Below, piece after piece: positions 1,061 through 53,343 of a DNA stretch of 64,000 bases (position 1 is its first letter; each line of letters opens with the position of its first letter). The notes beneath the pieces are model-generated. The model did no database searches and was not told where the DNA came from. It saw nothing but the letters and a program-made list of their open reading frames with translations. The stretch lies in NCBI RefSeq assembly GCF_006345805.1, contig NC_042997.1:72354001-72418000 (forward strand), read 5' to 3'. Made by a program: the position numbers and the translations under genes. The DNA is from Octopus sinensis (Eukaryota).

Positions 1061-3069
1061 AGGCATCCAAAACATATCTGCATAACTGATGAAGATTAAT
1101 GCTTTAGTTACAAAACTGAACTTAGTCTTAGAAGTAACCAGCAATAAAACTAATGACTCTATTCTATTTAACATATTACCACACATATGAAAGAGAACAA
1201 TTTCTTTTTTTATATTATGAATGTCTATTAACGTTTTTGTTACAAATCTACCAATAGATACCTGAAAAAATTTGGGTAACTGTTACTCATAACTGCCCAA
1301 AGTGACCCTATTCGTATTTTAATGTGAATTTGAGTGCAAATCTTGTTAAAATATTCATGAAAACATATGATTGTACTATGTAAACAGTTAAGTTACACTG
1401 GCCAACATTTTACATGATATCTGAATGCTGCAAATTCTTAAAGATTTTTTCCCTCCACTTCCATTTTCAGAAATGTTTCACTATGGATGAAAACTGGATA
1501 CCAGTTTTATTTTGTCAAGCAGTGAGTTTGAATTTGAGGTATTTTTGAAAGAAGACATAGAAAAATCTAAGAAAATATACGGCAAACATAAAAAGCATGT
1601 GTATGATTCTGAGTTGGATATTTCTATTTCCAAAAGCAAAACAATTCTAACAACAGTTTCAATAGTGATAAAAAGAAGTGAATTTGCATCTGAATATAGT
1701 AAGAATTTTATTTTAAAAATTGTTTCCTTAGCTATTTTTAGGAAGAAATTAGATCTAGCCATTGTCTTTCCAAGAAAATGAAACCCGTAGAATATTTTTT
1801 TCACTTTTTCCTTTGAAGCAGTTACTGCAGAAACAAATCATTATGCAGGACATAGACACAGAGGAAAAAGAAAATTTGAGGTTTCCCCCATACTTGGAAG
1901 AAAGTCAAAAATCCGAGTATCTTCAGAAATATTAATTTCCAATTTTCTTTTTTCAAATTTTCCTCATTTTTATTTATTATTTCCCTGTAAATTAAGATAT
2001 GACAAGTTTGGATTAATTTGTATTGTGAACCATTATTATAGGTGTTTCAGTGTATTAATGCATGTGTGTGAGTTTATTTCATTTAGTTGATGGCATGTAT
2101 TTCATTTCCTAATTTTCTTCAAAAACAAATTCCAGGATTTTGTTCTGCTTCACCAATATAGTAGAGCTGTCTTATGAGCATTAAGTTCAACTGATAGATA
2201 ATCCAGTAATTTTCACAAGTCTTCTATATTGAAATTTTGTTGTATGCTCATTGGATATTAGCGAATAACTCGTTTTTTATGTTGAGGTTTACACAAAATT
2301 TAAATAATTTTATATTTTGTAGTATTCATCTGTAATTAGATTTGCTTAAGTACCTTTTGTTAAATGGTGTTCGAAAAATCACAGTGATATGTTGATTAAT
2401 GAAAAAAAGTTGTTTTGTGATACCAGTCTAAATTCATGATTATTTTAGAATTTAATTTAAGCACTTTTTTTTTGGTTAGCAAATAGTAACGAAAAGATTA
2501 AAGATGTATTGCACACAAAGAAGTGTACATATTAAAACTCAAATAGCATTTTAAAAAAACTAAAATTTTATAAACATGACAACTTAATATACTTTAAATG
2601 CGAAGATACAAAAATTTAAAAAATTAGAAATTGTACTTTTATGATTTTAACCTCATCAAATTCTAATAGTTCAAATACTCAATTTGAACACAACAAAACT
2701 GACATATCTATCATGTATGTAAAAATAATAATTATTGTTATAATGCTAAGTAAATAGGCTAACAGAACATATCTAACAAAAAGAAATTGCTAGGAAATAT
2801 AAAGAAATACATTTTGCTTGTATGGATTGTGAGGTATAGTTGACAGATTTTGAGTTTAGAGTTACTAGGTTTGATCAGACAAGGAAAAAGGAAGCAACTT
2901 TATTTCACAACATGCTTATGATCATTATATACCATCAGAATATAAGAGTTTTCAAAATATCCAAGTTTCACTGATCCAAAAAAGAATTGCTACAGACCAT
3001 TATTTATGATTGTATCTGTTTTGAGGTCATATATATATATGAGTTACAGAAAGGAGTAGATAAGCTCTG

Positions 3070-3150
3070 GGCTACATGTTTCATAGCGAGCAGAACCTCA
3101 GAAGTGTAGATATCAAAGTGAGGTGTATACCACAAGCTATTCTTCAGGCC
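3070..3150 (-). ncRNA. Minimal type-I hammerhead ribozyme motif (PLE-type), intact core
   Basis: Minus strand reads GGC-CUGAAGA-AUAGC..(48 nt)..GCUAU-GAA-ACAUGU-A-GCC: stem I GGC/GCC, perfect 5-bp stem II, palindromic stem III, GUA cleavage triplet. Confidence 0.75.
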
Positions 3151-3212
3151 AAGAATCTTCCATGCATTTAACATGTACCTCCTTGCAACAATGTAAACTT
3201 TCATTTAATCGA

Positions 3213-3297
3213 GATATCCTTGGCCTGAAGAGTAGTCTGTGGTATACACCTTGCTTGGATATTTACCACTTCTGAGGTTCCGCTCGCTATGAAATAT
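3213..3297 (+). repeat. Inverted partner copy of the hammerhead-bearing repeat (degenerate)
   Basis: 3219-3297 is the reverse complement of ~3075-3155: tggcCTGAAGAgtagt...gctatGAAAtatatg. It is cut off at 3' by a SINE. Confidence 0.8.
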
Positions 3298-3299
3298 AT

Positions 3300-3515
3300 G
3301 CAGCGGCAAGCTGGCAGAATCATTAGCACACTGAGTGAAATGTTTAGTGGTATTTCATCTGCCGTTATGCTCTGAGTTCAAATTCCGTTGAGGTCGACTT
3401 CACCTTTCATGGTTGATTAAAAAGTACCAGTTAAGCACTGGGGTCGATGTAATCAACTTAATCCCTTTGTTTGTCCCCTCTATATTTAGCCCCCTGTGGG
3501 CAATGAAGAAATAAA
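3300..3515 (+). mobile_element. tRNA-derived SINE (family A)
   Basis: ggcaagctggcagaatcattagcac...gagttcaaattcc (B-box-like)...aagtaccagttaagcactggggtcgatgtaatcaactta; same family at 27357-27562 (-) and 43258-43460 (+). Confidence 0.75.
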
Positions 3516-3755
3516 TATATGTAGCCCAGATCTTATCTACTACATTCCGTAACTCTTGTATTCTTATTTGCACACCCAGCAACCCTGGCCGCCTGCTGTG
3601 GAATATAAAAATCAGCTTATTGTACTCCGATATAAAAAAAAATCCACATCTTTCCATCTCAATAAACCACTATTGTCCTTGCAAGTTGTTTTTTATATTT
3701 ACTACAGATTACTTAAAGTTAACTTTGTTCTTACAACACAATAGCTGGATCTTAC

Positions 3756-3808
<53 letters not shown>

Positions 3809-4149
3809 AATATATACTGTTGTATACTTCAGACAACATATAAACACAACCAGAAATATGGATTTAATATTTTTCTACTATAACTAAATTCTCATGGATA
3901 CAATGTTTCTTCAATTTTCACACCATAAAATATATCATAAAATATCAACAGTTCATGGAAAAAAAATGTAAAGGAACACTGACATTAACATGGGTAGCCT
4001 GTCAAGATTGTCAAAAGACAAGAATTTGGAAGATAGACAACAAGAACATACCTAACTGAAAACTTGTTTTATCCTGTATGATTCATTCACACACACACAC
4101 ATCATTAGTAACTTTCATTATTCACCATTTTTATTCCCTCCTAGCTGCT

Positions 4150-4317
4150 TAGTTTAGTTTTCATTAACCTTTTATTGAATACATTTAGACCATGTTTACA
4201 TAAACATGAAATAGTAGAAAAACAGCAAGATAGACAAACAAAAACCTCCATAAAACCTATTTATGTTACTAAAGCGATTAACATAAACCAAATTTACTAT
4301 AATCACCAAATACAGCT

Positions 4318-5321: not shown

Positions 5322-8300
5322 CTGTGGTAGAAAAAGAAAGCAAGAAACAAAATTATATATATATATATTAAATAATACAAATTGTTTATGATGAGTTTAT
5401 GACAAAAGAAAACAAGCATTTGAATATAAAAAAAGTAAATACTAATATGGAAAAGAAAATCAAATAAAATAAACCCTTGGCCATCAAAACTATGTGGTAA
5501 TCATCTATGAAATATGGTAAACATATATATAATAAGGATAAAATATATTTTGTCTTTGTTTTCCTTATTTCAATTCCTTATCAACAATCATTTGCTTCTT
5601 TTTTTTAATTCCTTCAAACAGATTATAAAAAAAAAAAATTACAAAAATATTGTGAGAGATTTAACAAGATAAACTACATACAGTCATTTGGAAAAGGAGT
5701 TAAAAATATTATCTAAATAAAAAATATAAAATCTGTACAAGATAACTTCTTAAAGAATTCCTTGTACAAATTCTTCCAAGATAAAGGAAGGACTATAATG
5801 GATACAATTTTTATTGTAAATTTTACAAACATTTTTTTCTAATTTTCAATTTAAAAACAAAACTAACTTAACCCTTTAGCATTCAAACTGGCCATATCTG
5901 GCCCAAATATTCTATCTTTTTTTGTTCAAACTGGCCAGGTCCAAGCTCTTACATCTACCATACATTGTCATTCTAAAAATAAACAATCATACCATTGAAA
6001 TCTCAAAACTATGAGATAATTCACAATTAATTCAAAGCAATGTGAATAAATAAGCATCACACTTGACAGAATAATCTGAATGCTAAAGGGTTTAAACAAA
6101 ATAGTGCTATGTTTTCTATCTTTCATCAGCAAACTTTGTTTAAAACTACTTGGTTTGGACAATGTGCTAATAGAGGATGTCAGTTAAATGTTTCCAAAAA
6201 TCATTGATAATTGTTATAAATACTGATAACAAAGATCAAGAGTTTTTGAGTTAAAAATTGCAAACAATACTGACAGACGGATAAAAATTTACATAAAATT
6301 AATAGAATTATAAATGTATTTTATACTTAAGAGGCAGATGAACTCAACAAAAATACAATTTGGACAATTTCTCCTTATCAATGTGTCTCAAAAATTTTCA
6401 ACAGCTTTTCACAAATTTTTAAAATCTACACTTGAGAAAGTACATAAACAGAATCAAATAATTTCTCTTTAGAAAGATAGGTTTTAGAAAATTTCTACAT
6501 AATATCTCACAAATGTATAATACAAATTTGAAGGGATATTTTGATAATATCAATAATTAAACATAGATGGGTATGTATTACTTATGGAAATAACAATAGT
6601 GATACCTATTGATAAAAAAAAACTTTAAAATGTCATCTGTATCAAAAATTCCAAAACTATTATACCCCGTTTTAAAACTGAGAGTAAACAATAAGCACAG
6701 CAGCTTTGGAGCTAATGTTTTATGCTTTAGCATAATTGATAACCCATGACAGAAAACGAGATGAAATCAAAATATTGCTGCATATTAAATCAATCATTTA
6801 ACTTCATATTCATAAAATTCAAAATATTTGTTGCATACATTTTGAAAATCAACTTTTGTTTGTAAGCGAATTAGTTAATTTGTTAAACAAATGGATGGGT
6901 GGCAATTAGCAAAATGGAATGTCTAAAATAGGAAGTAAAAATTTATTTGTTATGCAACCTAAAAATGGGGAAAATGAAATAAATTTGTTTCATAGCTATT
7001 CTAGAGTTAATTCAATCTCTGCTTACCTTCACCTGCACTTGATATTTCAACATAGCTGACCTTAATATCAATGCCTACAAGGAAGAAAAAGAATCAATTT
7101 CAAAATTATAAAAATTAGTTTAAATTTAGAAGAAAAAATAAATAAAATATGAATGAAATCTGATTATGTAAATATTCATTCATTATTTTAAATGGCCCAT
7201 TCAGTGAATAACTTTCATACAAAAAGCTTTATTCCTTCAAAGTCCATCAAAGTCTGGTAGTTTGACTATATTCTGTTTTTCATTCTGCTCAATCAGTAGA
7301 AAAGGCATAGGTAGAAACTCTATAATAAGTACCAGGTGTAAGCTATGGACACATAAGAGGTGCAGCAATATCAAAGGAAGGTTAACTGAGAAGATAGTTT
7401 TTGTGTGACAGATGCACAGGGGCAATAAACACCGAAGATGTATAGAAAACAGATTCCATCACATGCCAGGGGGAAAAACTATAAGTAGTTGATAGCTTCT
7501 GTTACCTAGGTGACCAAGTCAGTAGTGGGGGGGGGGTGCTCTGAGAGCGTAGCTGCTAGAATAAGAATAGCCTGGATAAAGTTCAGAGAGCTCCTACCTC
7601 TGCTGGTAACAAAGGGCTTCTCATTCAGAGTGAAAGGTAGACTGTATGATGCATGTGTGCAAACAGCCATGCTACACAGCAATGAAACATGGGCTGTGAC
7701 TGCTGAGGACATGTGTAGGCTTGAAAGAAATGAAGATAAGAAGCATCAGACTGTGCTGGTATGGTCATGTGTTACATATGGATGAAGACAGTTGTGTGAA
7801 GTGTCACACTGTAACAGTGGGGGGGAACCTGTGTAAGAGGCAGACCCAGGAAGACATGGGAAGAGGTGGTGAAGCATGACCTTCGAACAATGGGCCTTAC
7901 AGAGGTAATGACAAGCAACGGAGACCTTTGGAGATATGCTGTGCTTGAGAAGACCTGGCAAGCCAAATGAGATTGTAGCCATGGCTGATGCCAGTGTTGC
8001 ATAACCGGCCCGCTAAAAAGTACCCTTCAGTCATTGGGTAATATGATGTGCTTGAGAAGACCTGTAGAGTCAAGTAAAATCGTAGTCATGGCCGATGCCA
8101 GTGCTGCCTGACTGACACATAAAAAGCACTATTCGAGCATGGCTGATATCAGTGCTGGTGGTATGTAAAATGCACCATTCAAGTGTGGTTGATGCCAGTG
8201 CTGCCTCACTGGCTCCTGTACCAGTGGCACATAAAAAGCATTATTTGAGCGTGGTCGATGCCGGTCCCACCTGACTGGTTCCGATGCTGGTGGTACATAA

Positions 8301-11300
8301 AAAGCACCCACTACACTCTCAGAGTGGTTGGTGTTAAAAAGGGCATCCAGCTGTAGAAACATTGCCAGATCTGACTGGATCCTGGTGCAGCCTCCTGGCT
8401 TGCCAGTCCTCAGTCAAACCATCCAACCCATGCCAGCATGGAAAGCGGACGTTAATCAATGATGATGATGATGATAGACATATCTATTAATTTAAGAAAT
8501 ATTCCTTGCATTTCAAAATATTTAAACCAGTCAAATGTACTATGGAAATTTAGCACTTAAGAAAGGAGAGGGAAAGCCAGAAATATTTTATTCAACTATT
8601 CTAAATAATACTTACTTTTGTTCGACGTTCATATTCCTGACCCATTGCTATAGATTTTTCAAAAGTTGAACTACGTTGGTCTATATCTTTAGCATACAAT
8701 ATCTAAAGAAATAAAAGAGTAAAATTAAAGCTGCAATACAAATTAAAGCACAAAAGAAATTCAAAACCTTCTTCTAAAAAGATATTAAAACAAATATAGA
8801 TTTTGTTAAAGTAAAAATTTTTAAAATTTTATTACTGTTTATAGGGAGATGAATGCAGAACAGGAGTGAAATAGTTTTTCACAAAAATATGCATTTGTTC
8901 AATGATTGAGTAATTGCAATTAGACCCTTCTTCCTACTAAGCATTCAGTAGTTAAATAGGAATAGAACATGTTTGTTAATAAAGCAAGCAATATTACACA
9001 CACTGCTAGAAAGTACAAACAAGACTTAAATAAAAATGGATATGATAAATTTGAATACTTATACATCTAAAAGTAACTGGCATTAATTAATATCAACTTC
9101 AAGCAGCTTACGTTATATACAATTTTCACCAGGTAGTGTGTTGACTTATTTATATATATAACTATATACTTCATAAAAACCAATGTATCATTAATCCTTT
9201 TGTTACCATATTTCTTTCAAAATACACTGCTATTGTTTTAATTAATTTTTAAAATAATGAAGAATTTAGTAAAATATTTTTGTCATTATTATATAAGTGT
9301 GGAACAGAAAGTATTGAAGGAAGATTTAAATTTAGATCAGGTTAGAACAAAAGTTTGCTTCATAGAAACAAAGGCAGTCTCAGGTGAGTTGGTAACAAAT
9401 AGGTTTTGATGATTAAGAAATGTTTCATTCTCTAAAATCAGTTAAATGAATTATTCACTAACTAAAGTATAATATAAAAGTATGACTTCTATGGTTTAAT
9501 ATTTTTAAAAATATCTCTACATACCTATATTAATCCTCAATAAAAGTAACCTAATAACTTAGGTAGGCTTTTATTTTCTGTGAACATTATAAAACCTTTT
9601 AGAGGATTTGTATATACAAGACTTACAACCAAAAAGAAGCTCATTATTTTATATATTTCTGCAACATTTTTTTTTATTATTATTGTTTCCATTGGTAAAA
9701 ATTTACATGAATATTTTCTCTTTAACAACTTTCCAACACTGGCAATTATAAGACATGTTAGTAATGGCCCTCAAACTAAGCTAAAATATTAACCAAACTA
9801 CTGTCATTGCTCAAACAGAGTCAACTGATGCTGAGTGGAGCAGAAAACAGATTTTGCAAACTTAACCACTAAAATTTTTTTTAATATGACTTGCATTGAA
9901 ACAATTATTTGAGATTAACAGGAAATTTTTAATAAAAGATTAGCTTACAAATTTAGCATTGTATTTCAATGTAAAGTGCTAAATGATATATATAAATAAT
10001 AAGTACAAGATAGAATTTAAAAAATCTTAAGTGAAGCACCCTCTCCGAACATTTTGCCATGTCAGAATAGGTAAGACAATTTCCAAACATTGCAACAAAT
10101 AATATTGATGATTAATGGGTATTTGTTTTTACAGCTAAATGCTCTTTTCTTTACTAATTTTTCAAACATGATGTCAATACAATATTTGTAGCAATTAAAG
10201 TAATTTGAGAAAAACTATGCTAACATACTCTGGATGATTGTAGCATAATCACTACATACAATATATGTTACTTAAGAGTTTATTTTAAAAGAGTCATAAT
10301 TTAGCTTATAAAAATGATTTGGAGAAAGCTGAATGTTTCTGAAAAGAAAACACCACAATATGAAGAATATAAATATCATAATACCTTGTTGTGGGAGTCT
10401 ATTCTAGCATTAATTTGCCCATCCAATATGAGCTGCATTAATTCATCTTCCAGATCTTTGACATTTGTATTAAAAGCATCTGCCATTTTATGCATTTCAG
10501 CAGATAAATAAGGACTAAAATACTGAAAAAGAAAATAATTATGGTCTTTACAAAACCTAAACTTCAAAATTTTAAGAAAGCAAATCTGAGAAGTGATGTC
10601 CATGTGTTTTTAAAAGTACTGACTTAATTTTTATATGCATAGTCTTCTTTTAATGGTGATATATATATATATATATATATACGCACATACATTTTCTATA
10701 TATAAAGGGTCCTACCTAAACACTAGATCACATCCTCACAAAAAAAAAAAAAATTATTCTATTTGTGAACAGTTTGTGCATAAAAGATATGCTGGGAGAA
10801 TAGAAACAAGGCTAGTATCAGTTTTGAACTTAGAATCTGGACACACCAAATTTGATCTCATAAATCATCTTGATCTAGCTCTTTGTGACAAGTACATCAC
10901 CTTCATAACAATGATAATATAAACAATGGAGATAATTCCTTTTATAAGTTTCAAAGTATTAGAAAGAAGTAAGAAATTGTAATTGCCATACTTGTTAGTT
11001 TTAACAACATGAATTATAAATGAGACTGGATAACAAGATCATCTCATCAGGAATTTACCTCAGGTTTATATGAGACACAGCAATGAGAATAATTTATATT
11101 AAGAAAAGCAGATAACAACAAAGAATCTTTGGTAAACAATCTTCATATTTTTTAAAGCATACAACACACCCACCACACCCCCACCATTTTTAATGCTTAC
11201 TTTTCCATGCTTGCATGGGTCAGATGTGAATATGCTGAGGAAGAGTTTTCTAAGGCTAGATACTCTCCTTGTGGCCAACTCCCACTTGTTTTCATGTGAA

Positions 11301-14300
11301 GTACACAGTATCAAACAACAAACAGCCTGGACATGTTTTATGCAGAGAACTGGAAACAAACAATACTATTTGACGAGTTTTTTGTTTGCACAACATGTCA
11401 AGAAGCCTGAATATCCTTTTGCAGTGAACTGCAAGCAACACTGTCAAGAAGCGATTGCTTGCAAACCAGTGAACATGAGGGAAATACAAATTCACACACA
11501 CACAAACATACAGGCTTCTTCAATTTCCATCTAATCAAATCTAGATAATGTTTTAGTCAGCCTAGGGTTATAGCAGAAAACTCTTGACGAAGGTGTCATG
11601 CAGTGAGCCCAAAACCACATGGCTGGAAAGCAAACTTTTCAACCATACAGGTATATCTGTGCAAAAATAGTAAATGGATTATACTTTTTTTAAATAAAAA
11701 AGTGCACAATAAACACAATGTTCGAATATAATATGTAGATAACTTTTGCAGTAAAGGGCAACTAACAGCAGTAAGATAATTTGGTTGTGTAAAGTTGTTT
11801 GAGAATATTTCAACAGTATCTTATAAAGAAAAGTCAAGTACTTAGCTACCAGTTGGAACTAAATTTGTTTCCATTAGCCTTTGTATAACTTTTTAATATC
11901 TAGGCAACAAAAATATCTAAGTATGAACTTTTGTAATAGATAAAATAAGTAGTAAGTATAAGAGGTAAAGAAAATCTATAGGCATACTTCAAGCATTATG
12001 AATTCTGACAAAACACTTAAAAGCTATGTAAAACTATGAATGTTTATTGATGTGTAAATGTTATTCTATGCAAATAAAGTTATATGTTACAGCTAATTTC
12101 ATTCAATTTAGTTTATGTGATCATAAACAATTTCTTTGATGTGAGGAGTCTCCTAATTTGATGATCTGAACAAACCAATGTTTCAAATACAATAACACTG
12201 TTAAAGATTAGACACTCATACACACCTCTAAAATTTAATATAAACATTCAGAGTAGCTACACACTAATTGAGCTTATTTCATACAGTTAATCTTCCACAT
12301 TAACAACCTCTGTATCCTAGATTTTTTCCAACAGTTAACCAAGAATTAAAATTAAAAAATATTATTTATTCTCAGAAAAATACACACCCAGGATTTAACT
12401 GGTACAGAAAGATAACTTTTTAATTTTACTAACCAAGCTGACCTATTTAACAGTGAAGGAGGACGGTCCAAAAGCATTGTAGCATGAGTGAAAACAAGGT
12501 AATGACAGTTCAGACAGTTCATATCTCTGCTGGCAACAAAGGGTTTCTTTCTCAGAGTAAAGGGTAAACTGCATAATGTTTCTGTATGATGTGCAATGAT
12601 TACAAGGTAGCAACATGTGCACTTTTACGGAGGAGAATTTGTAAATGCTAGTGAAAAGTGGAATATGCTAAACTGGAAATATAATGCTAGTGCATATGAA
12701 CAACGAAATGCAAATTAACTAAAAGAAAACCTGGATGTTAGAGAAATCGAACACAATGGGCAAGACAGAGGAATTCTGCTGATGCACATGGAGGATGTCA
12801 GTTGTATCAAGTGTTGAGTGCTCCAAGAGGTTGAACCCATGAATGAAACAGACCTAGAAGACATGTGATGAAGCAATACACACTAATCTCAAGAAACTGA
12901 ACTTCACAAAGGACTACAAAGAGTGGCTACATTTGATGCTGGAGAAGACCTGCTTATGCACACAAGAACAGCAAAACACAGTAAAATGATGGTAATGAAG
13001 GTCAGAATATACATCTACATTTGAGTTACGTACCCATTACATTCCAGTTAAGTCTTCATTTACAGTGCTGACATCTTCATTATCATTTCTCCTATCATTA
13101 CTATGCCACATGTATGGATGAAGAGCGACATTGGATTTGTTCATATTCAACCCACACTACCATCATCTATGATTTTTCTACTTTTCTCCTGTGAAGCCAT
13201 CTATGTAACAATGGCACTGACTGTCTGTGTTCAATCTCCACCTTCCATTACTATCCTTTATTGTGAACCATCTCTCTCTCATTCTCTCCATTACTTGTTC
13301 ACTACTTTATCATTCACTATTGACAGCCATCACTCTCTCTTACTATTACCCATATTTACTGGAGCTCATTACTCTCTCTTCTATCATTCATTGTTGACAT
13401 CCATCATTCTCTTTACGCCATCAATCACACTTGCATTACACCCTCTTTCATCAGCCTGCTTCCCTCCTATCACACATAATCTTCCCCTATCATGCTGCTC
13501 ATAATGTTTTTCAATTCAACCCCTTCACCAGCAACCAACATGTAGCTGCCCATTACTCTCCCTTCCATTACTACCAACTCTTCATCCTCTCATCTACCTC
13601 ATTCCCACATATCATTTGTGTAACAAAAGATGGCATCAGATCTGTTTCTATTCAATCTCCATCTATCATCATTCGTCTTCATTATTATTACTAACCATCA
13701 GTCTCTTTTGCATGCTCTCATTATCCACTTCCTTGTTACTCATTATGGTCATCAACATAATTTCTCTTCTATTCATCCTTTTGGTCATGTTGCTTTGAAT
13801 GAAGAGACTATGTGAAACTCTTTGCACACACCATAGAAAAGGCAATCTTACTACTAGAGCTGGTGCCACAACAAAATGTACCAATACACTCTGTAAAGTG
13901 GTTGGTGTTAGGAAAAGCATGCAGCCATAGAAACCATACCAAAAATTAAACATAAGCAAGATGTTCCTGACTCGTTTAAAAAAAGAGAATCTTCAAATGA
14001 GAACAGGCTCAGACCATGACAATTAATTCAACCAATTGCCAATATGGAAAGTATAACGTGGTGGTGGAACAATATTGTAGACAGGGCTATTAGAGAAAAG
14101 AGACAGGCTTGGAAGGTCTGGAAAAATGGGGGTAGCAGGGAATTGTATCAGACTGCCAAAAGAGAAGCTAGGAGACAGGTTTATTTAGCCAGAGGGGAAG
14201 CAGATAAGAAAAAATTTGCCAATGTTCTGCGCCGTGAGGACCAAAGACTGGAGGTGTTTCGTGTTGCAAGACAGTGTGTGAGAGAGAATCGTGATGTGGT

Positions 14301-17300
14301 AGGAGAGAAGTGTGTTCGCATGGAAGATGGTTCACTTACGCTAAATGAGGATGCAAAGAGAGAGGTTTGGAGATGCCACTATGAAAGGTTGCTGAATGAA
14401 GAAAATGAATGGGATAAAGAGAGTCTGCCGAATGTTGACCCAACAGAGGGACCAGCTATCCGAGTTGATAGTTCCGTGGTAGCTAAGGCAATTAGAAGCA
14501 TGAAGACAGGGAAAGCCCCAGGCCCATCAGGAATCACTGCAGAGATGCTCAAAATGTCTGGTAGTGTCGGCTACAGCCTAGTCACCCGTATAGTTAATCA
14601 GGTGATACACAAAGGGGTCATACCCAATGACTGGTGTAGCAGCATAATAGTCAACTGCTACAAAGGTAAAGGTGATGCCCTAGATACAAATAACTACAGA
14701 GGTATCAAGCTGTTGGACCAGGTGATGAAGGTTACGGAGAGGGTCATAGCCCAACTAATTAGAGAGAGAGTTAGTTTAGATGAGATGCAGTTTGGGTTTG
14801 TGCCAGGGAAAAGTACTACTGATGCTATATTCCTGGTAAGGCAGCTGCAGGAGAAATACCTAGCCAAAGATAAGCCCCTGTACCTGGCTTTTGTTGACAT
14901 GGAGAAAGCCTTCGACAGGGTCCCCCGATCCCTTATCTGGTGGGCAATGAGGAAACTAGGGATAGATGAATGGTTAGTGAGAGCTGTGCGGGCCATGTAT
15001 AGGGACACCGCTAGTAGGGTGAGGGTTGGAAATGAGTACAGTGAAGAATTCCGGGTAGAGGTAGGGGTCCACCAAGGCTCAGTACTCAGCCCCCTCCTAT
15101 TTATCATAGTCCTCCAGGCAATAACGGAGGAATTCAAGACAGGATGCCCTTGGGAGCTCCTCTATGCTGATGACCTTGCTCTAATTGCTGAGTCGCTATC
15201 AGAACTGGAGGAGAAGTTTCAGGTGTGGAAACAAGGATTAGAATCGAAGGGCCTCAGAGTCAATCTAGCTAAAACCAAAGTCGTAATCAGTAGGAAGGTA
15301 GACAAATCACAAACACCTTCAGGTAGATGGCCCTGCTCGATCTGTAGAAAAGGTGTAGGTAGAAACTCTATAAGATGCACCAAGTGTAAGCTATGGACAC
15401 ATAAGAGATGCAGCAATGTCAAAGGAAGGCTAACTAGGAAGATGGTTTTTGTATGTGGCAGATGCTCAGGAACAATAAACACTGAAAATGCTCTGAGACC
15501 AACTTCCGTCACTTTCCAGGGAGAAAAACTAGAAATAGTTGATAGTTTCCGTTACCTAGGTGACCAAGTCAGCAGCGGGGGCGGGTGTGCTGAAAGTGTA
15601 ACTGCTAGAGTAAGAATAGCTTGGGCAAAGTTCAGAGAGCTCTTACCTCTGCTGGTGACAAAAGGCCTCTCGCACAGAGTGAAAGGCAGACTGTATGATG
15701 CGTGTGTACGAACAGCCATGCTACATGGCAGTGAAACATGGGCCGTGACTGCTGAGGATATGCGTAAGCTCGCTAGAAATGAAGCCAGTATGCTCCGATG
15801 GATGTGTAATGCCGGTACTCACACTCGGCAGAGTGTAAGTACCTTGAGAGAAAAGCTGGACCTAAGAAGCATCAGTTGTGGTGTGCAAGAGAGACGTTTG
15901 CGCTGGTATGGTCATGTGGCGAGAATGGATGAAGATAGTTGTGTGAAAAAGTGCCACACCCTAGCGGTTGAGGGAACCTGTGGAAGAGGCAGACCCAGGA
16001 AAACCTGGGACGAGGTGGTGAAGCACGACCTTCGAACTTTAGGTCTCACTGAGGAAATGACTAGAGACCGAGACCTCTGGAAGTGTGCTGTGCGCTAGAA
16101 GACCCGGCAGGACAAGTGAGACCATAACCCGTGGCCTTCTACATGGGATGGAGCCAGCCTACGTATGCATACCTTCCCTTCTTGGGACACAAAACTCTAC
16201 TTGTGAAGACGTGTTGAGGCAAGTGAGGATCAGAATCGAAATCAATCAATGGAAATTGCGGATGTGCTACCAGTGCCGGTGGCATGTCGAAACTCTGCTT
16301 GTGAAGACCTCGTTGAGGCAAGTGAGGATCAGAATCGAAATCGATCAATGGAAATCGATCAATGGAAATTGCAGATGTGTTACCAGTGCCGGTGGCATGT
16401 AAGAGAACTTTCCGTTTTGCGGCCGTTGCCAGCACCGCCCCGTTTCGTGTCCGTTGCCAGCCTTGCCTGGCCCTCGTGCCGGTGGCACATAAAAAGCACC
16501 ATCCGTTCGTGGCCGTTTGCCAGCTCTGTCTGGCACCAGTGCGGGTGGCACGTAAAAAGCACCCACTACACTCACGGAGTGGTTGGCGTTAGGAAGGGCA
16601 TCCAGCCGTAGAAACACTGCCAGATTTGACTGGGCCTGATGAAGCCTTCTGGCTTCACAGACCCCAGTAGAACCGTCCAACCCATGCTAGCATGGAAAAC
16701 GGACGCTAAACGATGATGATGATGATGAATTGCCAATATGGAAAGTAAATAGATGATGGTGATAAATTAAAATAGGAAAACAATGATATGTTAGTTGTTT
16801 TCAAACAAAACTATCAGGCATAACATATATATAAACTTTTAATGAAATTATAACTTCTTTTTATGACAAGCATATGAAATGTCACAATTTTTGCAAGTTC
16901 AGATTCTGCTAGAGGTATTAAATTTGAGCATTTCTATGTTTTTATACTTGAGATTTATACAACCAGGCAGAGATACCCTCAAATGTTACTTCCAAAATCC
17001 AAATTATAATGTTCAAAGTAGCCAGAGACTAACTAAGTTTAATTAATAGTCACCTACATCATCATCATCATCTCAGAAACTGACAGAAAACTACAGAAAA
17101 ATCTTCTTTGAATTTCACTCTCACTTGAATGGTAAGTGTACAAAATAAACTTTTAAAACAAAACCTTACATTTTCTCTTGTCACTCTACAATCTTTGTTC
17201 CATATAAGAATGGGAGCTGGCAGGGAGAGACTGCTGGCTCAAATTTGAACACTTGCATGTTTCTTGAATAATTATATAATTGGATACTCTTTCTACACCA

Positions 17301-23300: not shown

Positions 23301-26300
23301 TAATTGCCTTAATAGCAATAGACCAATGAGCAATAGCCTTAATCTTGCAAATAAAGGAACAATACAGTCTGGCTAATACAACCATATGCTAAGAAAATTA
23401 AAAATAACTTAGTAAAAACAATATTTAAACTAATTAACAAATCTATTATATAAAAATCCATTCTGTCTGTCTGTGTGTGTGTCTTCTAGGATCTTGGGCA
23501 TCCTCCATCCGATTGCGCTCAAATTTGATATGTAGATACTGATAGTATCAGGGCGTGTAAAAGTCTAGAAAAAATTACAAAAATCCATTCCAGGTGAGAA
23601 TGCAATCGATAAAGCCATGGAAACGTGCATTTGTATGTGCAAGTACATCAGCTGTTGCGATCGATACTACGCGTACGCAAGAAAGATGCACGTGCAGTTT
23701 GCACAAAAAAGTCAAGGAGCAGGGGATGCTGTTTTTATTTTCCACTGCAGACTACCTCGTTGACAAACGAGAGAGACCTTCTCTTTGTGGCTGGTGACTT
23801 CAACGGTCACGTTGGACAATATGCTGGGGGCTTCCATGGTGTACATGGAGGCTATGGCTATGGTTCCCGCAATGAGGAGGGAACCAGGCTGCTGGAGTTC
23901 TGCGATGCAAATGATCTTATGATTTGCAACACTAACTTCAGGAAACCTACCAGCCACCTAGTCACCTACCAATCGGGCCAAAATACCAGCCAAATTGACT
24001 ACATCCTTGCCAGGAAAAGGGAAAGATGGCTGCTTATAAATGCCAAAACCTTCCCAGGTGAAGAATGTACCCCGCAACATAGACTGGTAGTTAGTGACTT
24101 TAGGATCAGGACTAAGAGGACGACCAACATGGAGAAGAAGGATCTGGAAGCTTAAAGATCCTGCGAATGGACAGAGATTTAGGGACATATTACTTGAAGC
24201 CTTTGACGAAGTAGAAGGGGATAGAGCATCACATGGGGTAGAAGACAACTGGACGTTTCTAAGGGACAACCTGCTGAAAGCCACTGACCAGATCTGTGGC
24301 TGGTGCAAAGTCCCCTTTCGACCCAAAATAACGTGGTGGTGGAAATATGTTGTAGACAGGGCTATTAGAGAAAAGAGACAGGCTTGGAAGGACTGGAAGA
24401 ATGGTGGTAGCAGGGAATTGTATCAGACTGTCAAAAGGGAAGCTAGGAGACAGGTCTATTTAGCCAGAGGGGAAGCAGATAAGAAAAAATTTGCCAATGT
24501 TCTGCGCCGTGAGGACCAAAGACTTGAGGTGTTTCGTGTTGCAAGACAGTGTGTGAGAGAGAATCGTGATGTGGTAGGATAGAAATGTCTTCGCATGGAT
24601 GATGAATCACTTGCGCTAAATGAGGATGCAAAGAGAGAAGTTTGGAGATGCCACTATGAAAGGTTGCTGAATAAAGAAAATGAATGGGATAAAGAGAGTC
24701 TGCCGAACAGAGGGACCAGCTATCCAAGTTGACAGTTCCTTGGTAGTTAAGGCAATTAGAAGCATGAAGACAGGGAAAGCCCCAGGCCCATCAGGAATCA
24801 CTGTAGAGATGCTCAAAATATCTGGTAGTGTCGGCTATAGCTTAGTCACCTGTATAGTTAATCAGGTGATACATGAAGGCGTCATACCCAATGACTGGTG
24901 TAGCAGCATAATAGTCAACTGCTACAAAGGTAAAGGCGACGCCCTAGATACAAATAACTACAGAGGTATCAAGCTGTTGGATCAGGTAATGAAGGTTATG
25001 GAGAGGGTCATAGCCCAACTAATTAGAGAGAGAATTAGTTTAGATGAGATGCAGTTTGGGTTCGTGCCAGGGAAAAGTACCACTGATGCTATATTCCTGG
25101 TAAGGCAGCTGCAGGAGAAATACCTAGCCAAAGATAAGCCCCTGTACCTGGCTTTTGTTGACATGGAGAAAGCCTTCGACAGGGTCCCCCGATCCCTTAT
25201 CTCCAACCATTATGTACCAGAAACAAAGGGTAGTAACAACAGTAGCAATGAGGATTTTCTTTCTATTGTTGTATGTCTTAAAATAAGTGTTTGGATTTTT
25301 TTTTTTTTTATCACTGGCTAATTTTCACTTGGAAATAAATTTAGCTTGTGCTTTTAAGCAAAGAGAATTGGAACAATTATAAAATGCAGCTTATAAGGAA
25401 TCAACATAGTGATATTTTGACAAATCTACTAGATTTTAAAATACATTTCTCTAAAAGCATCAGTCATAAAGCAAAAAAGCCAACAGCTTTACCTCAGTAC
25501 GTCCAGTAGTGCTCTCTGCCTTCTGTACATAACTGATAACATGTGACCAATTTTCTAAATAGACGCTAACCTGTGAAACAAAGTTAATAGAAACAAACAC
25601 AAAAGTCATTTATATGGAAAAACAAGCATTTCATTATACAATAAATAAGTGAAGTAAAACATGTCTTATTCTCTCTAGCAAACCTAAAAGATACTCTTAG
25701 ATGATGAAATGACAGTCAGTCAAGGAATGCAGCAGTGATTCTTATTTTAATAAATAATAATATAAATGATTGTTTCGGGTAGGCTCAATAATCCTGCCTG
25801 TACAATATTTTAAGATTCATTTATTCCAATGTTAATCCTACAACTGACAAAATTGAACAACCTGGGATGGACTCAACATGTATGAACATATTTCAAACTG
25901 AAATCAGTTACAATCTATTAAATGATAGATTATACGGACCAGCAGACAAAACAGCCACAGAAGAGACTGCTCAAAAAGTTTGCTGGAAGCAGTAGGAAAG
26001 TTATGTTATTTAGTACTGGGAATGGAACTAGTGATAATATAGTGATTACTGGCAAATATCAAAATTAACTTTTATTAACAATTAATAACAATAATAATAA
26101 TGAATTATATAACTAAATTAAATTTCAATAATAATATAGTGCATATAGTATAAACCTAAAGTGTTTATCTTATAGAACACAAACCAATATTCCAAAGGGA
26201 AAAAAATACCTTGATAACATTGAGACACATGTTCACAACATGTTTTGGACTGGTACAATAATCTCGTGCTCTGGAATAACATTTTAATGCATTACACAAA

Positions 26301-29300
26301 TCACCCATATCAAGATAATGGTCTCCAAGATCATCATTTCCACGTCTAGAATGTGAAGAAAAAGAAGATATGGTGTTAATAAATAGAAATAAAAACAAAT
26401 ATTAACACAACAAGGAATTATATTTTGTAGAGAAACCATAAATCACTTAAAATAATTAATTATCAGCAAACGAAGCAGCATTAATACCAAAAGGCAATCT
26501 TTTATATCCAAGTTAACATGGATATATTGTTAGAGTGCCTTAAAAGGACCTCTCATATGGATGCATGATGCATAAAAGCACATGTATTTATATCATTGGA
26601 AGATGAGTATTGTATGCTACAGGCACCAGAATGGTCAAATCATGTGATTTCAACGTGCCTGGTTTCATCAGTAGTAGACATCTGGGAGACACATACCAGC
26701 TGAATCTCGCTGCCAAAAATATACACAATTTCAGTGTCTTTTCCAGCACTGATGTTGCAAATAGCCAGCAAGTTTATTAAAACAATTGTCAGTGACAGAA
26801 GAAATATTAATATCCAACTTAACATGGAAGGAAGTATTGTTAGAGTGCTGAATGCTGCATTATTTAACTTGAGAGGACCTCTCATATGGACGCATGATGC
26901 ATAAAAGCACACATATTTATACCACTGGCTCATCTGCCAATGGTATAAATATGTGTGCTTATTAAAAAAATTAAACTGCAGGTTTAACTTTTTTAATAAG
27001 CCTCTTAGATAATTGCAACATCAGTGCCTGAATGGGCACTGAACTTACATGTATTGCTGGTAGCAAGATTTGGCTGTGTGTGGCTACCAGACAACTGTCA
27101 CGTGATCTAACAGTTCCAATGCCCACAACAGATGATTCTCGCTAAATGAATAAATATATTTACAATGTTTTATGCTGATAAATATACATGAAATGCGGCA
27201 TAATTTTTCAGTACCCTAATATAACTTTTGCTTCCATAACTAATATAAGTGAAAACTACAAAAATTGTACGACAATACAGATAAAAATCAGTGAAATGTA
27301 AAATTGTTTAAATATCATATAAGCTGAGTTCTTAACAAAATTTTGATTTCAAATTTTGGCACAGAGCCAGTAGCTTAGGAGAAGGAGTAAGTCAATTACA
27401 CCAACCCCTGTGCTCCACATGGTACTTATTTTATCAACCCCAAAAGGATGAAACGCAAAGTCAACTTCAGCGGAATTTGAACTTAGAACGTAAGGGCAGA
27501 CAAAATGCCACTACGCATTTTGCCTGGTATGCTAACAATTCTGTCAGCTCACCGATTTAGTTCTTAGTAAAATATTACAATATATTATGTGACTTCCTAA
27601 ATGTCCATTATTATATTTATATTATAGTTATGTCCTAATTTTGTACAGTTTGTCCACTTTTTCCTTTGTTTAAAGATGAACGATTGAGCTGAAGAGAAAT
27701 ATTTTCAAATTTTTGACTCTGACCTGTTTCTGAAAATTATTATTATTGCTATTGTTGTCAATACCATAATTTAAAACAATTGGATAATATATATATAATA
27801 CACCACATATAATGCATAGAGTGTAGTATTATTTGACACAGGGAAGCAACAAGTAGAAAAATTAGGACTGGATTTGCTCATGGTCACATCTGAAAACATA
27901 AACTGATTTGGAATGCTAGGGAATATCAGCACTACAAAATGTCCTTTGCAAAATGACTGAAGCCTTAATTAACAGGTCTATCTAGCTGAAAATAAATATC
28001 ATGTGCAGGTACTTAGTAGAAAAGTGAGTTCAAATCCTCCTATGGGCTTGAAGAAAGCAAAAAGAAATCACACCAGGTTGTTTTCGCCCTAATCAATACT
28101 GTTGATTTCATTTTAAACAGCATTTCAACAATCTAATAACTTATAACATATACCTTTCCTGTGTTTAACTCCTTTAGATGCTCTAATTAATGAGAGAGAG
28201 AAAGTTTGCATCTGTGTGTGTCGCTCTCTCTCCCCACTAACCTTGAAATTCTGTGTTTGCTACAAATCATAGTATTTTCATTTTCAATATTCTGCAAAAC
28301 ATGTTTGGCTACGAGGATAAAATTACTTTGCTTGAAAACTATTGAGCAGACAATGAGAAGAGATCTGACCAAAGAAAATCTGACCCACTAAACCCCATCC
28401 AGTCCAAGCAATCATGGAAAAGTGAACACTGATTATAAAAACTCAATGTATAAAATGCTATGTCTTACCTTATGCTTTCTTTAATTGAATTACTCTTATA
28501 ATTTTTCAGATCGGTATCTAATTTTTCTAGCTTGAGCTGTGCTTTCTTAATAGTCAATTCTATCCACATATTATCTAAAGGTGGTACACTTGATACAGCA
28601 TCTGGTAATGTAGATGGTCTGAAATGAGAAGATTAGCAAATCTTAGGTAGAATCTTGAAGACATTCTGTGCAATAAATTGAACACACTTCCATACATTAT
28701 TGCACTAACCTATTTTGAAAAACATTTTACTTACTTCATGGTATTCTTTTATTCATTTACTGGTATGTCTTTGGACTGCATGAATGGGGGAAGATGTCAG
28801 TAGGAAGTGGTTCAGGAGAGAAGGAGCAATGACAGGTAGCAAAGAAAAGGTGATGTAGTAACAAGTTCTGCTTTCATTAATTACAGCAACAGTAGGTAGA
28901 GAAATGATAGAGGGAAGAGTGATGTGGAAGACAAAGAGAGGAAGAGCAGCAGGTATAAATATGACAGAATCATACTGAGTGAGGTTCCGAAATGTAAGCA
29001 TACATATGTTTCTAGCTTCCATCATTACCACCACTGTAACATTGCATGTCATCTTCATCCTTAGATTAGTCTTCATTCCGTGTCATCCTGTCTCCTTCTT
29101 CCACAAGTTCCATCACTATGTAATCAACATTTCTTGATACAACTGTCCTTATCCATATGTATCACATAACTAGACCAACATACATCTGATTTCTCTTATG
29201 CAGTTTTTCTCTCAACAGGTTTGTACTTCATATTTCAAGCACACTGGTATTGCACATCCAGTTAAGCATGCTCACTTTATTTCTTTCTAACCTCTGCAGG

Positions 29301-44584: not shown

Positions 44585-45960
44585 CATCATCATCCAGTGT
44601 TTTAAATCTGGGGTTTTGTCCCCGTTAACAAGGGTGGCCAGATCTACCTCAATGCCATAGCAACCGCCCTCACACCAACTTGCCCAGTTTTGGGCATCCT
44701 CCCTTCTCAAGTCAGCCCTTCCAATTTACCCACATTTACCTCAAACTCAAGCACCCTCCTCAGAACATGCTCTTCATTCCACCTCAACACATGTCCATAC
44801 TACTGCACACCATTCGCCCCAGTCAGCCATTCCACCAATTCCTCCAGCCCCAGCGTCCCCATCAAGTCTTCAGTCCTCCTCTTAACAAACAGTTTCACAC
44901 CACACATTTTTTTCACCATTGCTCTCTCGGTCCTTCTCAAAATTGCCATCTCTCCCCATTCATACACCATGTCACACTCCCATACAGCATTGCAGCTTTC
45001 ACGCAACTCCTATGACACTTCTTTTCATCTTCAATGAGAATCTTTTTCCATATAACAATGCTCCACATTCTCTGAACTTCACCCAGCCAAGCCTCACTCT
45101 TGCTGTCACAGCTGCTTCATCTCCACCCTATCTCCCAAACAACAAAACCCTCTCACTATTTCTGCCTCGTCACATAAACGTTTCCACTGGGTCCACCAGT
45201 CCTCCAGCTCCTTTCTCACATCTTCCCCAAATAAACTTTCTTGCCAGTCTTAGGGGTCACCTTCATTTCCGTACATCTACCATGGATCCATTTTTTACAT
45301 CTCGTACACAACACCGCATTTGCCATTACACTCCTCCCACATACACCACATGGATCCATTTTACTCACTAACACTTCTCCTTCCACACCACTCACCATCA
45401 CCTTTATCTTCCCAAAGTTTACTGTCAAACCCTTGCTTTCAAATGCCTCCTTCCATTTCCAAAACTTCTCCTTCAATCTCTCCATTGTCTCACTCATCAG
45501 AACAAGGTCATCAGCATACAGTATCTTCATTATTAATCCTTCACTTCCACTCTCTGTCACCACATCAACCACTATTGCAAACAACAACAGTGACAACACA
45601 AATCTCTGATGGACACCAACTTTCACTGCAAACTCCTCCGACATCTCTAATCCAATTCTAACTCGTCTTTACCACCATCACTGCTCTCACTATTACCTCT
45701 AGTACACCTCTCTTCCTCAATGCACACTCAATCACTTTCCTTAAAACCCTATCAAATTCCCTTTCCAGATCAACAAAGTACATATACAACCCCTTCTCCT
45801 TATCTCAGCATTTCTCTTGCAATCTCCTTACAATGAAGACTGTATCTATTGCCCAACTTCCTGGCATAAAACTAAATTGCATCTTGTCCACATCCACCCC
45901 TTTCCAAATTCTCTTCTCCAACACCCTTTCCACTATCTTCATTGCATGCTCCATTCTGTC
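44585..45960 (-). mobile_element. RTE LINE (second subfamily), degenerate RT plus 3' end
   Basis: SEEFAVKVGVHQRFVLSLLLF..ILYADDLVL..AFESKGLTVNFGKIKVM..CGVCGRSVMANAVLCTRCKKWIHGRC; (GAT)-like tail near 44590. Confidence 0.88.
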
Positions 45961-53169: not shown

Positions 53170-53343
53170 ACACAACTATAAGAGAGAATCAACTATGTGG
53201 ACGCTCTTACGCTAGATATAGATCCGCAAAGGGACTCAACCACTAAGAATTGTTCTCAAGGAGAACAATTCTTAGTGGTTGAGTCCCTTTGTGGATCTAT
53301 ATCTAGCGTAAGAGCGTCCACATAGTGGATACTCTCTCATAGT

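What the first reader, a model, noticed from the sequence alone, without database searches (positions are those of the whole stretch)
3070..3150. Intact minimal hammerhead ribozyme on the CSN1 strand just downstream of the gene
Seen: GGC-CUGAAGA-AUAGC..GCUAU-GAA-ACAUGU-A-GCC, with all core nucleotides present and a GUA triplet. The 10.1-11.1 pair is A-U where the inverted sister copy has G-U, which suggests a compensatory change. Known: Penelope-like elements carry minimal type-I hammerheads whose palindromic stem III allows dimeric cleavage. Inference: it lies ~1 kb past the candidate CSN1 poly(A) signal on the same strand, so read-through CSN1 transcripts would contain it and it could act as a co-transcriptional cleavage site.
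Basis: partly seen in the sequence, partly recalled or inferred. Interest (0 to 1): 0.7.

Follow-up and report, generated by a model that had tools for sequence, protein, structure and literature searches.

The report
Decayed retrotransposon hammerhead relic in CSN1 intron
The hammerhead ribozyme motif is really there, but it is most likely a worn-out leftover of a Penelope-like retrotransposon insertion inside the last intron of the octopus CSN1 gene, and not a working RNA-cutting site for that gene.

Summary
The motif is exactly as described on the minus strand, 3150->3070, with predicted cleavage after A17 at 3073. A matching descriptor finds 3 hits in the window against 0.04 expected from shuffles.

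1. The motif is one arm of a head-to-head inverted pair of short 5'-truncated copies (3041-3156 and 3216-3555). The pair abuts a (TA)n microsatellite, which is the insertion signature published for Penelope-like elements (PLEs). The sister arm is split inside helix III by a 213-nt SINE-like insertion.
2. The "compensatory" A-U versus G-U difference is a single one-sided transition. The canonical G10.1-C11.1 pair is missing in every copy, consistent with CpG decay (CpG o/e 0.31).
3. The annotated long CSN1 isoforms have a final coding exon that is not in the window. The motif therefore lies about 3.9 kb into their last intron, not simply downstream of the gene.
4. There is no second sense copy to form the dimer that minimal hammerheads need. 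The antisense sister arm, transcribed first, can pair with the motif (-117 kcal/mol against -15 for the ribozyme fold).

Verdict: an ordinary PLE-derived relic, probably inactive. Family membership could not be confirmed because no Octopus genome DNA was reachable.

The parts
3070..3150 (-). Minimal type-I hammerhead motif (copy A). It comprises helix I GGC/GCC, the CUGAAGA box, helix II AUAGC/GCUAU with a 48-nt insert, GAA, and helix III A-CAUG-U. Predicted cleavage is 3' of A17 at 3073.
3041..3156 (-). Arm A: a 5'-truncated repeat copy. It starts at the 5' edge of the extended helix I and ends 32 nt past the cleavage site at GUAACUC.
3024..3040 (.). (TA)n microsatellite abutting the 3' end of arm A. 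This is the presumed insertion target.
3157..3215 (.). 59-nt spacer between the two head-to-head arms. It is either filler or an extra 5' stretch of one copy.
3216..3299 (+). Arm B, first part (sister copy). It carries GGC-CUGAAGA-GUAGU...GCUAU-GAA-A-UAUAU and is broken inside helix III.
3300..3520 (.). SINE-like interspersed repeat (3300-3512) plus the second copy of its 8-bp target duplication AAATATAT (3513-3520; the first copy is at 3292-3299).
3521..3555 (+). Arm B, second part: G-U16.1-A17-GCC followed by the tail, ending at GTAACTC.
7027..7074 (-). CSN1 exon encoding [16 protein letters not shown] (aa 461-476), with a GT donor at 7026. It is the last CSN1 coding exon present in the window.
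4130..4181 (-). Two AATAAA hexamers (starting at 4176 and 4135 on the minus strand). They could end an alternative terminal exon whose candidate acceptor, cag|TGA, is at about 5324.
   Evidence: inference; no transcript data

Best explanation
This is a relic of one old insertion of a Penelope-like element (PLE), or of a non-autonomous element mobilised by PLE machinery, into a (TA)n microsatellite in the last intron of CSN1.

How it arose (inferred): both DNA strands were nicked and used to prime reverse transcription from the 3' part of the element RNA. That left two short (~115 nt) 5'-truncated copies head to head. Each copy carries the element's minimal hammerhead about 32 nt from its 3' end.

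What the hammerhead does in an active element (from the literature): in tandem PLE transcripts, two sense copies pair through the palindromic helix III and self-cleave as a dimer.

What it does here (inferred): the copy is a passenger. It has lost the canonical G10.1-C11.1 pair, probably by CpG deamination of C11.1. It has no sense partner in cis. It is preceded in the CSN1 pre-mRNA by the antisense sister arm, with which it forms a long hairpin. Its sister was later broken by a SINE-like insertion. It is therefore most likely catalytically silent and has no role in CSN1 3'-end formation.

Shown: the motif, the inverted pair, the SINE-like insertion and its target duplication, the (TA)n flank, the intronic position, and the folding energies. 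Inferred: the PLE origin, the both-strand priming mechanism, and the inactivity.
For: Motif and enrichment: 3 hits against 0.043 expected.

Inverted arms: 86-87% identical, with their 3' ends pointing outward.

(TA)n flank: all three hammerhead hits in the window have a (TA)>=5 run 33, 103 or 56 nt downstream of the cleavage site. The background chance of such a run within 120 nt is 6%.

Published PLE traits:
- 5' truncation, an adjacent inverted 5'-truncated copy, hammerheads near the 3' ends, and a microsatellite/(TA)n target bias (PMC8557442).
- A PLE protein cleaves and extends both strands, targets AT-rich DNA, and starts reverse transcription downstream of the hammerhead (PMC11167929).
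- Paired minimal hammerheads 100-700 bp apart on opposite strands, and no detectable cleavage by a single motif (PMC4209133).
- PLE expansions in Octopus (PMC13282606).

Decay: the sister arm is split by a 213-nt repeat with an 8-bp target duplication. CpG o/e is 0.31, and all four hammerhead copies in the window have U11.1 as TpG.

Folding: the ribozyme-competent monomer fold is -14.7 against an MFE of -22.2 kcal/mol, an ensemble fraction of about 2e-6. The arm-arm duplex is -116.6 kcal/mol, and the whole repeat folds at -223 kcal/mol, z = -12.6.

Intronic position.
Against: - No PLE reverse transcriptase or GIY-YIG ORF is in the window.
- No other copy of this repeat could be obtained, so homology to an Octopus PLE pLTR is untested.
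- Helix II (5 bp plus a 48-nt insert), the absence of the usual bulged nucleotide after A9, and A10.1-U11.1 all depart from the published minimal-hammerhead consensus.
- No clear target-site duplication flanks the pair.
- Inactivity is inferred from thermodynamic models and analogy, not measured. PLE hammerheads may use protein cofactors in vivo.
- Core positions are unchanged between the arms (0/13), which is compatible with constraint, although not significant.
Confidence: 0.72

Rival explanations
1. Functional or exapted ribozyme. The hammerhead cleaves CSN1 transcripts, either read-through RNA as the reader proposed or the pre-mRNA of the long isoforms inside their last intron. This would aid termination or favour the short isoform that ends at a proximal terminal exon.
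For: - The core is intact and on the sense strand.
- It is transcribed as part of the last intron of the long isoforms.
- A candidate alternative terminal exon and AATAAA signals lie 1-2 kb upstream.
- The core is unchanged between the arms.
Against: - There is a single sense copy, while minimal hammerheads need a dimer and single motifs show no detectable cleavage.
- The 10.1-11.1 pair is not G-C.
- The ribozyme fold is strongly disfavoured, and the motif is sequestered by the antisense sister arm, which is transcribed first.
- No related sequence or descriptor hit is present in the Argonauta CSN1 locus.
- The arms' divergence and the SINE-like hit look like neutral decay.
Confidence: 0.04
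2. MITE or foldback DNA transposon. The 115-nt arms are terminal inverted repeats of a non-autonomous DNA element, and the hammerhead-like motif in them is fortuitous or captured.
For: It is a compact inverted repeat of about 294 bp without the SINE-like insert, with a 59-nt loop and a very stable hairpin.
Against: - No target-site duplication is evident. The flanks are ATATAT on the left and TTGTAT on the right.
- A complete hammerhead in each arm is very unlikely by chance.
- Two other, unrelated hammerhead hits in the window show the same (TA)n adjacency, which is a retroelement/PLE trait.
Confidence: 0.1
3. A single PLE-derived copy was later duplicated in inverted orientation by a local rearrangement, such as a replication template switch, rather than by both-strand priming at insertion.
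For: The arms are only 86-87% identical and differ by a 2-nt indel in helix III. The 59-nt spacer is unexplained.
Against: Inverted adjacent 5'-truncated copies are a documented primary product of PLE integration, and both arms end at the same 3' terminus (GTAACTC).
Confidence: 0.12

Closest known systems
Minimal hammerhead ribozymes of Penelope-like elements (Cervera & de la Pena 2014, PMC4209133; Lunse, Weinberg & Breaker 2017, cited in PMC6765202)
   Same: - Type-I topology, complete catalytic boxes, short helix I, and a tiny palindromic helix III that implies dimeric cleavage.
- Occurs as a pair on opposite strands 100-700 bp apart.
- Dispersed truncated copies, located near the element's 3' end, next to a (TA)n target.
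   Different: - Helix II is 5 bp plus a 48-nt imperfect insert, rather than 6-8 bp with a small loop.
- There is no bulged nucleotide between A9 and 10.1.
- The 10.1-11.1 pair is A-U (G-U in the sister copy), not the highly conserved G-C.
- No PLE ORF is nearby and no family consensus is available.
Drosophila virilis Penelope hammerhead variant (PMC4209133)
   Same: [quoted passage not shown] It also escapes standard descriptors and models.
   Different: The D. virilis copies are nearly identical (a recent invasion) and sit in full elements. This copy is old, diverged and truncated.
Intronic hammerheads HH9/HH10 of amniotes (Rfam RF02275, RF02277; my own knowledge of de la Pena & Garcia-Robles 2010)
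   Same: A sense-strand hammerhead inside an intron of a protein-coding gene.
   Different: HH9/HH10 are stable monomeric ribozymes with loop-loop tertiary contacts and are ultraconserved across species. This motif matches no Rfam hammerhead model and is absent from the Argonauta locus.
Discontinuous hammerhead in mammalian Clec2 3'UTRs (Martick et al. 2008, cited in PMC4209133)
   Different: The Clec2 ribozyme is an efficient monomer with a large insert in helix I and is conserved among rodents. Here the insert is in helix II, a dimer would be required, and there is no evidence of conservation or activity.
Animal non-LTR retrozymes (PMC7229834; bioRxiv 10.64898/2026.07.22.740005)
   Same: Non-autonomous, hammerhead-bearing repeats thought to derive from PLE pLTRs.
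   Different: Retrozymes are head-to-tail tandem arrays that give circular RNAs. Here there are two inverted copies and no direct repeat.

Membership tests
Hammerhead ribozyme (general) | Catalytic boxes C3-U4-G5-A6-N7-G8-A9 and G12-A13-A14, the A15.1-U16.1 pair, and H17 at the cleavage site | tested here: met
   CUGAAGA at 3147-3141, GAA at 3082-3080, A15.1 at 3079, U16.1 at 3074, A17 at 3073
Hammerhead ribozyme (general) | Three helices radiating from the core | tested here: met
   Helix I is 3 bp, or 3+4 bp across one mismatch. Helix II is 5 bp and can be extended after a 2x2 internal loop. Helix III is 1 bp as a monomer and 6 bp as a dimer.
Hammerhead ribozyme (general) | Conserved G10.1-C11.1 closing pair of helix II | tested here: not met
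   It is A-U in this copy and G-U in the sister. The two other hits in the window also have U11.1. This is consistent with CpG->TpG decay (CpG o/e 0.31).
Hammerhead ribozyme (general) | Match to curated covariance models (Rfam Hammerhead_1, _3, _II, HH9, HH10) | tested here: not met
   No hammerhead hit at gathering score or at E<=10. A textbook-looking minimal hammerhead at 36455-36489 is missed too, so the models do not cover minimal forms.
Hammerhead ribozyme (general) | Site-specific self-cleavage giving 2',3'-cyclic phosphate and 5'-OH ends | not testable with these tools
   Needs a bench assay. Thermodynamic modelling puts the monomeric active fold at about 2e-6 of the ensemble.
PLE minimal hammerhead (min-HHR) | Type-I topology with a very short palindromic helix III or loop 3 | tested here: met
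   A-CAUG-U, with ACAUGU self-complementary. The homodimer helix III duplex is -6.6 kcal/mol.
PLE minimal hammerhead (min-HHR) | Long helix II (6-8 bp) with a small loop, and an unpaired nucleotide between A9 and 10.1 | tested here: not met
   5 bp plus a 48-nt insert, with no bulge
PLE minimal hammerhead (min-HHR) | Lies in the pseudo-LTR of an element that encodes RT plus a GIY-YIG endonuclease | tested here: inconclusive
   No PLE ORF is in the window; the RT ORFs present are LINE-type (RVT_1 + PHD). The copy is 5'-truncated to about 115 nt, so no ORF is expected. No Octopus PLE consensus could be fetched.
PLE minimal hammerhead (min-HHR) | PLE insertion signature: 5' truncation, adjacent inverted copy, AT-rich/(TA)n target, hammerhead near the 3' end | tested here: met
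   Head-to-head arms with outward 3' ends. A (TA)n run starts 33 nt past the cleavage site, and the same holds for the 2 other hits, against a 6% background. The traits are as described in PMC8557442 and PMC11167929.
PLE minimal hammerhead (min-HHR) | Belongs to a multi-copy consensus family with covariation in the helices | not testable with these tools
   Only two copies are available. Their helix differences are one-sided transitions. No eukaryotic genome DNA collection is available, and the indirect routes failed.
Animal non-LTR retrozyme | Head-to-tail tandem repeats, each with a type-I hammerhead | tested here: not met
   No direct repeat of the unit is present; there is only the inverted pair.
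Conserved intronic hammerhead (HH9/HH10-like) | Positional and sequence conservation across species, and a stable monomeric fold | tested here: not met
   The Argonauta hians CSN1 locus (88 kb, including its 40-kb last intron) has no homologue of the arm and no descriptor hit. The monomer fold z-score is -0.43. Octopus orthologues could not be fetched.
MITE / foldback DNA transposon | Terminal inverted repeats flanked by a target-site duplication | tested here: inconclusive
   Inverted arms are present, but the flanks ATATAT and TTGTAT give no clear duplication.

The most novel reading that the evidence does not exclude
The relic may retain enough activity, through protein chaperones, trans-dimerisation or breathing of the hairpin, to cut CSN1 pre-mRNA about 3.9 kb into its very long last intron. 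That would bias expression towards the 476-aa isoform, which ends at a proximal terminal exon. It would be a retrotransposon-derived ribozyme acting as an isoform switch in a cephalopod housekeeping gene.

A milder version is also open. Two of the three hammerhead hits in the window carry a 46-48-nt helix II insert and a GAAACAUGU junction. This may define an undescribed long-helix-II hammerhead subclass in Octopus PLEs.
Probability: 0.04. Interest if true: 0.6.

Novelty: new member of a known kind. Interest (0 to 1): 0.2.

Why it matters
It matters little for CSN1 biology, because the evidence points to a neutral retrotransposon relic. It has three modest uses.
- It shows that Octopus introns carry PLE-type minimal hammerheads at a density far above chance. 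The open literature I searched does not describe this for cephalopods.
- The obligatory C11.1-G12 CpG makes genomic hammerhead copies in CpG-depleted genomes lose their key helix II pair early. "Intact core" scans therefore overestimate the number of active ribozymes.
- A motif scored as "downstream of a gene" can be intronic once long isoforms with distant last exons are taken into account.

Tried and rejected
- **Rfam** at gathering score and at E<=10: no hammerhead hit. The weak mir-2513, mir-3473 and MIR319 hits only reflect the arm-arm hairpin and fall far below their gathering scores.
- **Fetching orthologous Octopus loci through the CSN1 protein:** Shorter isoforms are not on record. 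Only Argonauta hians was obtained.
- **Fishing for other repeat copies through the spurious 66-aa ORF across the arm:** no homologue was found. Exact look-ups of two ORFs found nothing.
- **Pattern scan of metagenome contigs:** three hits, all from one unrelated soil-bacterial locus (52% GC) with no similarity beyond the pattern.
- **Search for a PLE RT/GIY-YIG ORF** in the window or in L001 to seed a search for Octopus PLEs: none found.
- **Similarity among the three hammerhead-bearing sequences:** not above shuffled controls, so they are not one family.
- **tRNA scan of the SINE-like insertion:** none found.
- **Lunse et al. 2017 (PMC5785218):** not held in the library.
- **The "compensatory change":** rejected as evidence of selection.

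Full report
**1. Observation**

On the minus strand the sequence reads GGC-CUGAAGA-AUAGC-(48 nt)-GCUAU-GAA-A-CAUG-U-A|GCC from 3150 to 3070.
- All hammerhead core positions are present: C3 to A9, G12 to A14, A15.1/U16.1, and H17 = A.
- The cleavage triplet is GUA, and the predicted cut is 3' of 3073.
- Helix III (ACAUGU) is self-complementary.

**2. Chance**

I wrote a descriptor of this shape: helix I >=3 bp, helix II >=4 bp, loop 2 <=60 nt, and 0-8 nt inside helix III.
- It finds 3 hits in the 64-kb window against a mean of 0.043 in 300 dinucleotide-preserving shuffles.
- The stricter form (helix II >=5 bp, palindromic helix III) finds only the focal motif, against 0 in 300 shuffles.
- The descriptor was shaped on the focal motif. 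The two further hits, at 36455-36489 and 53446-53534 (both minus strand), are independent, so hammerhead motifs are truly enriched here.
- The 88-kb Argonauta hians CSN1 locus has none.
- Rfam gives no hammerhead match at gathering score or at E<=10. It also misses the textbook-looking minimal motif at 36.4 kb. This shows the motif is not a canonical hammerhead stabilised by loop-loop contacts, but it says little about minimal forms.

**3. Surroundings**

The motif is one arm of an inverted repeat.
- Arm A runs 3156->3041 on the minus strand.
- Arm B runs 3216-3299 and resumes at 3521-3555 on the plus strand.
- The arms are 86-87% identical and separated by a 59-nt spacer.
- Arm B is interrupted inside helix III by a 213-nt insertion (3300-3512) flanked by an 8-bp duplication AAATATAT. 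The insertion has partial copies elsewhere in the window and in Argonauta, so it is an interspersed SINE-like repeat. Before that insertion arm B read GAA-A-UAUAUG-U-A-GCC, another complete core.
- The two copies are head to head. Their homology begins at the 5' edge of helix I, and both end 32 nt past the cleavage site at GTAACTC. The outer ends of the pair are therefore the 3' ends of the copies.
- Arm A abuts a (TA)n run at 3024-3040.
- All three hammerhead hits in the window have a (TA)>=5 run 33, 103 or 56 nt downstream of the cleavage site. Only 6% of window positions have such a run within 120 nt.

**4. What is known**

- Minimal hammerheads with short palindromic helix III occur in the pseudo-LTRs of Penelope-like elements and in huge numbers of dispersed truncated copies in metazoan genomes.
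- Pairs on opposite strands 100-700 bp apart have been described.
- A single motif showed no detectable cleavage, and dimers showed low cleavage (PMC4209133; review PMC6765202).
- PLE insertions are typically 5'-truncated, often have an adjacent inverted 5'-truncated copy, carry the hammerhead near the 3' end, and favour microsatellite/(TA)n targets (PMC8557442).
- A purified PLE protein cleaves and extends both DNA strands, targets AT-rich DNA, and starts reverse transcription downstream of the hammerhead (PMC11167929).
- Octopus genomes contain PLE families with an old expansion (PMC13282606).

The structure at 3041-3555 fits this picture point by point. I therefore read it as the product of one PLE-type integration with both-strand priming. 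This is an inference. No PLE ORF is in the window, and I could not reach any Octopus genome DNA to test homology with a PLE pseudo-LTR.

**5. Gene context**

CSN1 is on the minus strand. Exons for residues 36-476 of Octopus CSN1 map from 43690 down to 7027, and several are 100% identical to the annotated protein.

The 547-aa isoforms of O. bimaculoides, O. sinensis and O. vulgaris continue with 71 residues (SDAEDRRKEEK...) that are not encoded anywhere in the window. In Argonauta that exon lies 40 kb beyond the VQVK exon. The Octopus genes span 126-142 kb. So the motif sits about 3.9 kb into the last intron of the long isoforms, in sense orientation, and is transcribed without any read-through.

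The 476-aa isoform must end at an alternative terminal exon. A good candidate acceptor followed directly by a stop codon (cag|TGA) is at about 5324. AATAAA hexamers lie at 5167, 4176 and 4135.

**6. Can it work here?**

- *No dimer partner.* The window holds no second sense copy on the minus strand, so the dimer that minimal hammerheads need cannot form in cis.
- *Unfavourable monomer fold.* Folded alone, the 101-nt region is no more stable than shuffles (z = -0.43), and its MFE is not the hammerhead. Forcing the hammerhead helices gives -14.7 against -22.2 kcal/mol, about 2e-6 of the ensemble.
- *Sequestration.* In the CSN1 transcript the antisense of arm B is made first. Its duplex with arm A is -116.6 kcal/mol, and the whole 541-nt region folds as one long hairpin (-223 kcal/mol, z = -12.6).
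- *Non-canonical 10.1-11.1 pair.* The A10.1-U11.1 pair replaces the G-C pair that the PLE hammerhead study lists as highly conserved. From my own knowledge of hammerhead mutagenesis this lowers activity.

These are model-based arguments, not measurements.

**7. The "compensatory" change**

| Region | Differences between the arms |
|---|---|
| Core | 0/13 |
| Helix I | 2/16 |
| Helix II | 2/10 |
| Loop 2 | 6/48 |
| Helix III | 1/4 plus a 2-nt indel |

- Both helix II differences are one-sided transitions (A/G opposite U, and C/U opposite G), which keep pairing automatically.
- Zero core changes against about 1.6 expected is not significant.
- If both arms date from one insertion, their differences arose in dead DNA.
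- All four hammerhead copies in the window have U at 11.1, forming TpG with G12. The canonical C11.1-G12 is an obligatory CpG, and the window is strongly CpG-depleted (o/e 0.31; TpG 1.31). CpG decay of C11.1 is the simplest reading.
- The CAUGUG in the 53-kb copy could likewise derive from a palindromic CACGUG. This is inference.

**8. Conservation**

The only other octopod locus I could fetch (Argonauta hians, L001) shares the exons and some interspersed repeats. It has nothing matching the arms and no hammerhead hit. Its introns are not alignable with the window, so this rules out deep conservation only. Conservation within Octopus remains untested.

**9. Verdict**

The PLE link is well supported by structure and context but is unproven by homology. 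The functional inference is not supported. The most likely reading is a decayed, inactive PLE-derived hammerhead pair in the CSN1 last intron. That makes it a new member of a known kind, of low interest. The one mildly unusual feature is a long helix II insert, which it shares with one other hit in the window.

Noticed in passing
window 36455-36489 (-): A second, textbook-looking minimal hammerhead: GUUU-CUGACGA-A-GAGC-UCU-GCUU-GAAA-CG-UU|AAAU. It has the bulged A after A9, a CG palindrome and G10.1-U11.1. A (TA)n run lies 103 nt downstream. A 27-nt inverted partner fragment lies at 37117-37143, paired with 36575-36601.
   Followed up: partly
window 53446-53534 (-): A third hammerhead hit: helix I 6 bp, helix II 6 bp with a 46-nt insert, GAAA-CAUGUG-UU, and G10.1-U11.1. 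A (TA)n run lies 56 nt downstream. Its architecture resembles the focal motif, but it has no significant sequence similarity to it.
   Followed up: partly
window 3300-3512; also 27384-27549 and 43268-43418; L001 1720-1781 and 19302-19360: A SINE-like interspersed repeat with an 8-bp target duplication (AAATATAT) is inserted into the sister hammerhead. Related copies are present in Argonauta. ARAGORN detects no tRNA in it.
   Followed up: partly
window 8410-8477; about 30 sites in L001: A 60-65-nt repeat core in a CSN1 intron has about 30 copies at 80-89% identity across the 88-kb Argonauta CSN1 locus. It is a very abundant octopod repeat.
   Followed up: no
window 7027-1 (-) and beyond: The last coding exon of the 547-aa CSN1 isoforms (aa 477-547) is outside the window, so the last intron is longer than 7 kb here (40 kb in Argonauta). 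A candidate alternative terminal exon for the 476-aa isoform starts at about 5324 (cag|TGA).
   Followed up: partly
window 14044-16098 (+); fragments at 23625-25321 (+), 45216-45644 (-), 7510-7785 (+): An intact 684-aa LINE-type reverse transcriptase ORF (Pfam RVT_1 plus a PHD finger) lies inside a CSN1 intron on the opposite strand. Degraded relatives occur elsewhere in the window. Their coding sequence accounts for the recurring CTGAGGA...GAAA pattern hits.
   Followed up: partly
window 3035-3561 (-): The inverted arms would form an ~85-bp plus ~40-bp near-perfect dsRNA hairpin in CSN1 pre-mRNA. This is a plausible ADAR editing or small-RNA substrate in a cephalopod. The weak Rfam miRNA hits (mir-2513, 32 bits against a gathering score of 89) only reflect this hairpin.
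   Followed up: no
window 53170-53348: An 88-nt inverted repeat is 95% complementary with only 3 nt between the arms. It lies just beyond the (TA)n run that follows the third hammerhead hit.
   Followed up: no
whole window: CpG is strongly depleted (o/e 0.31), with excess TpG and CpA (1.31 and 1.27). There are 36 (TA)>=5 microsatellites in 64 kb.
   Followed up: yes
window 47267-48040 (-): A 257-aa ORF carries a CCHC zinc-knuckle-like motif (CYKCKKRGHMKYVCPEGE) and a lysine/glutamate-rich region. It has no Pfam match and is probably a retroelement ORF1/gag remnant.
   Followed up: partly
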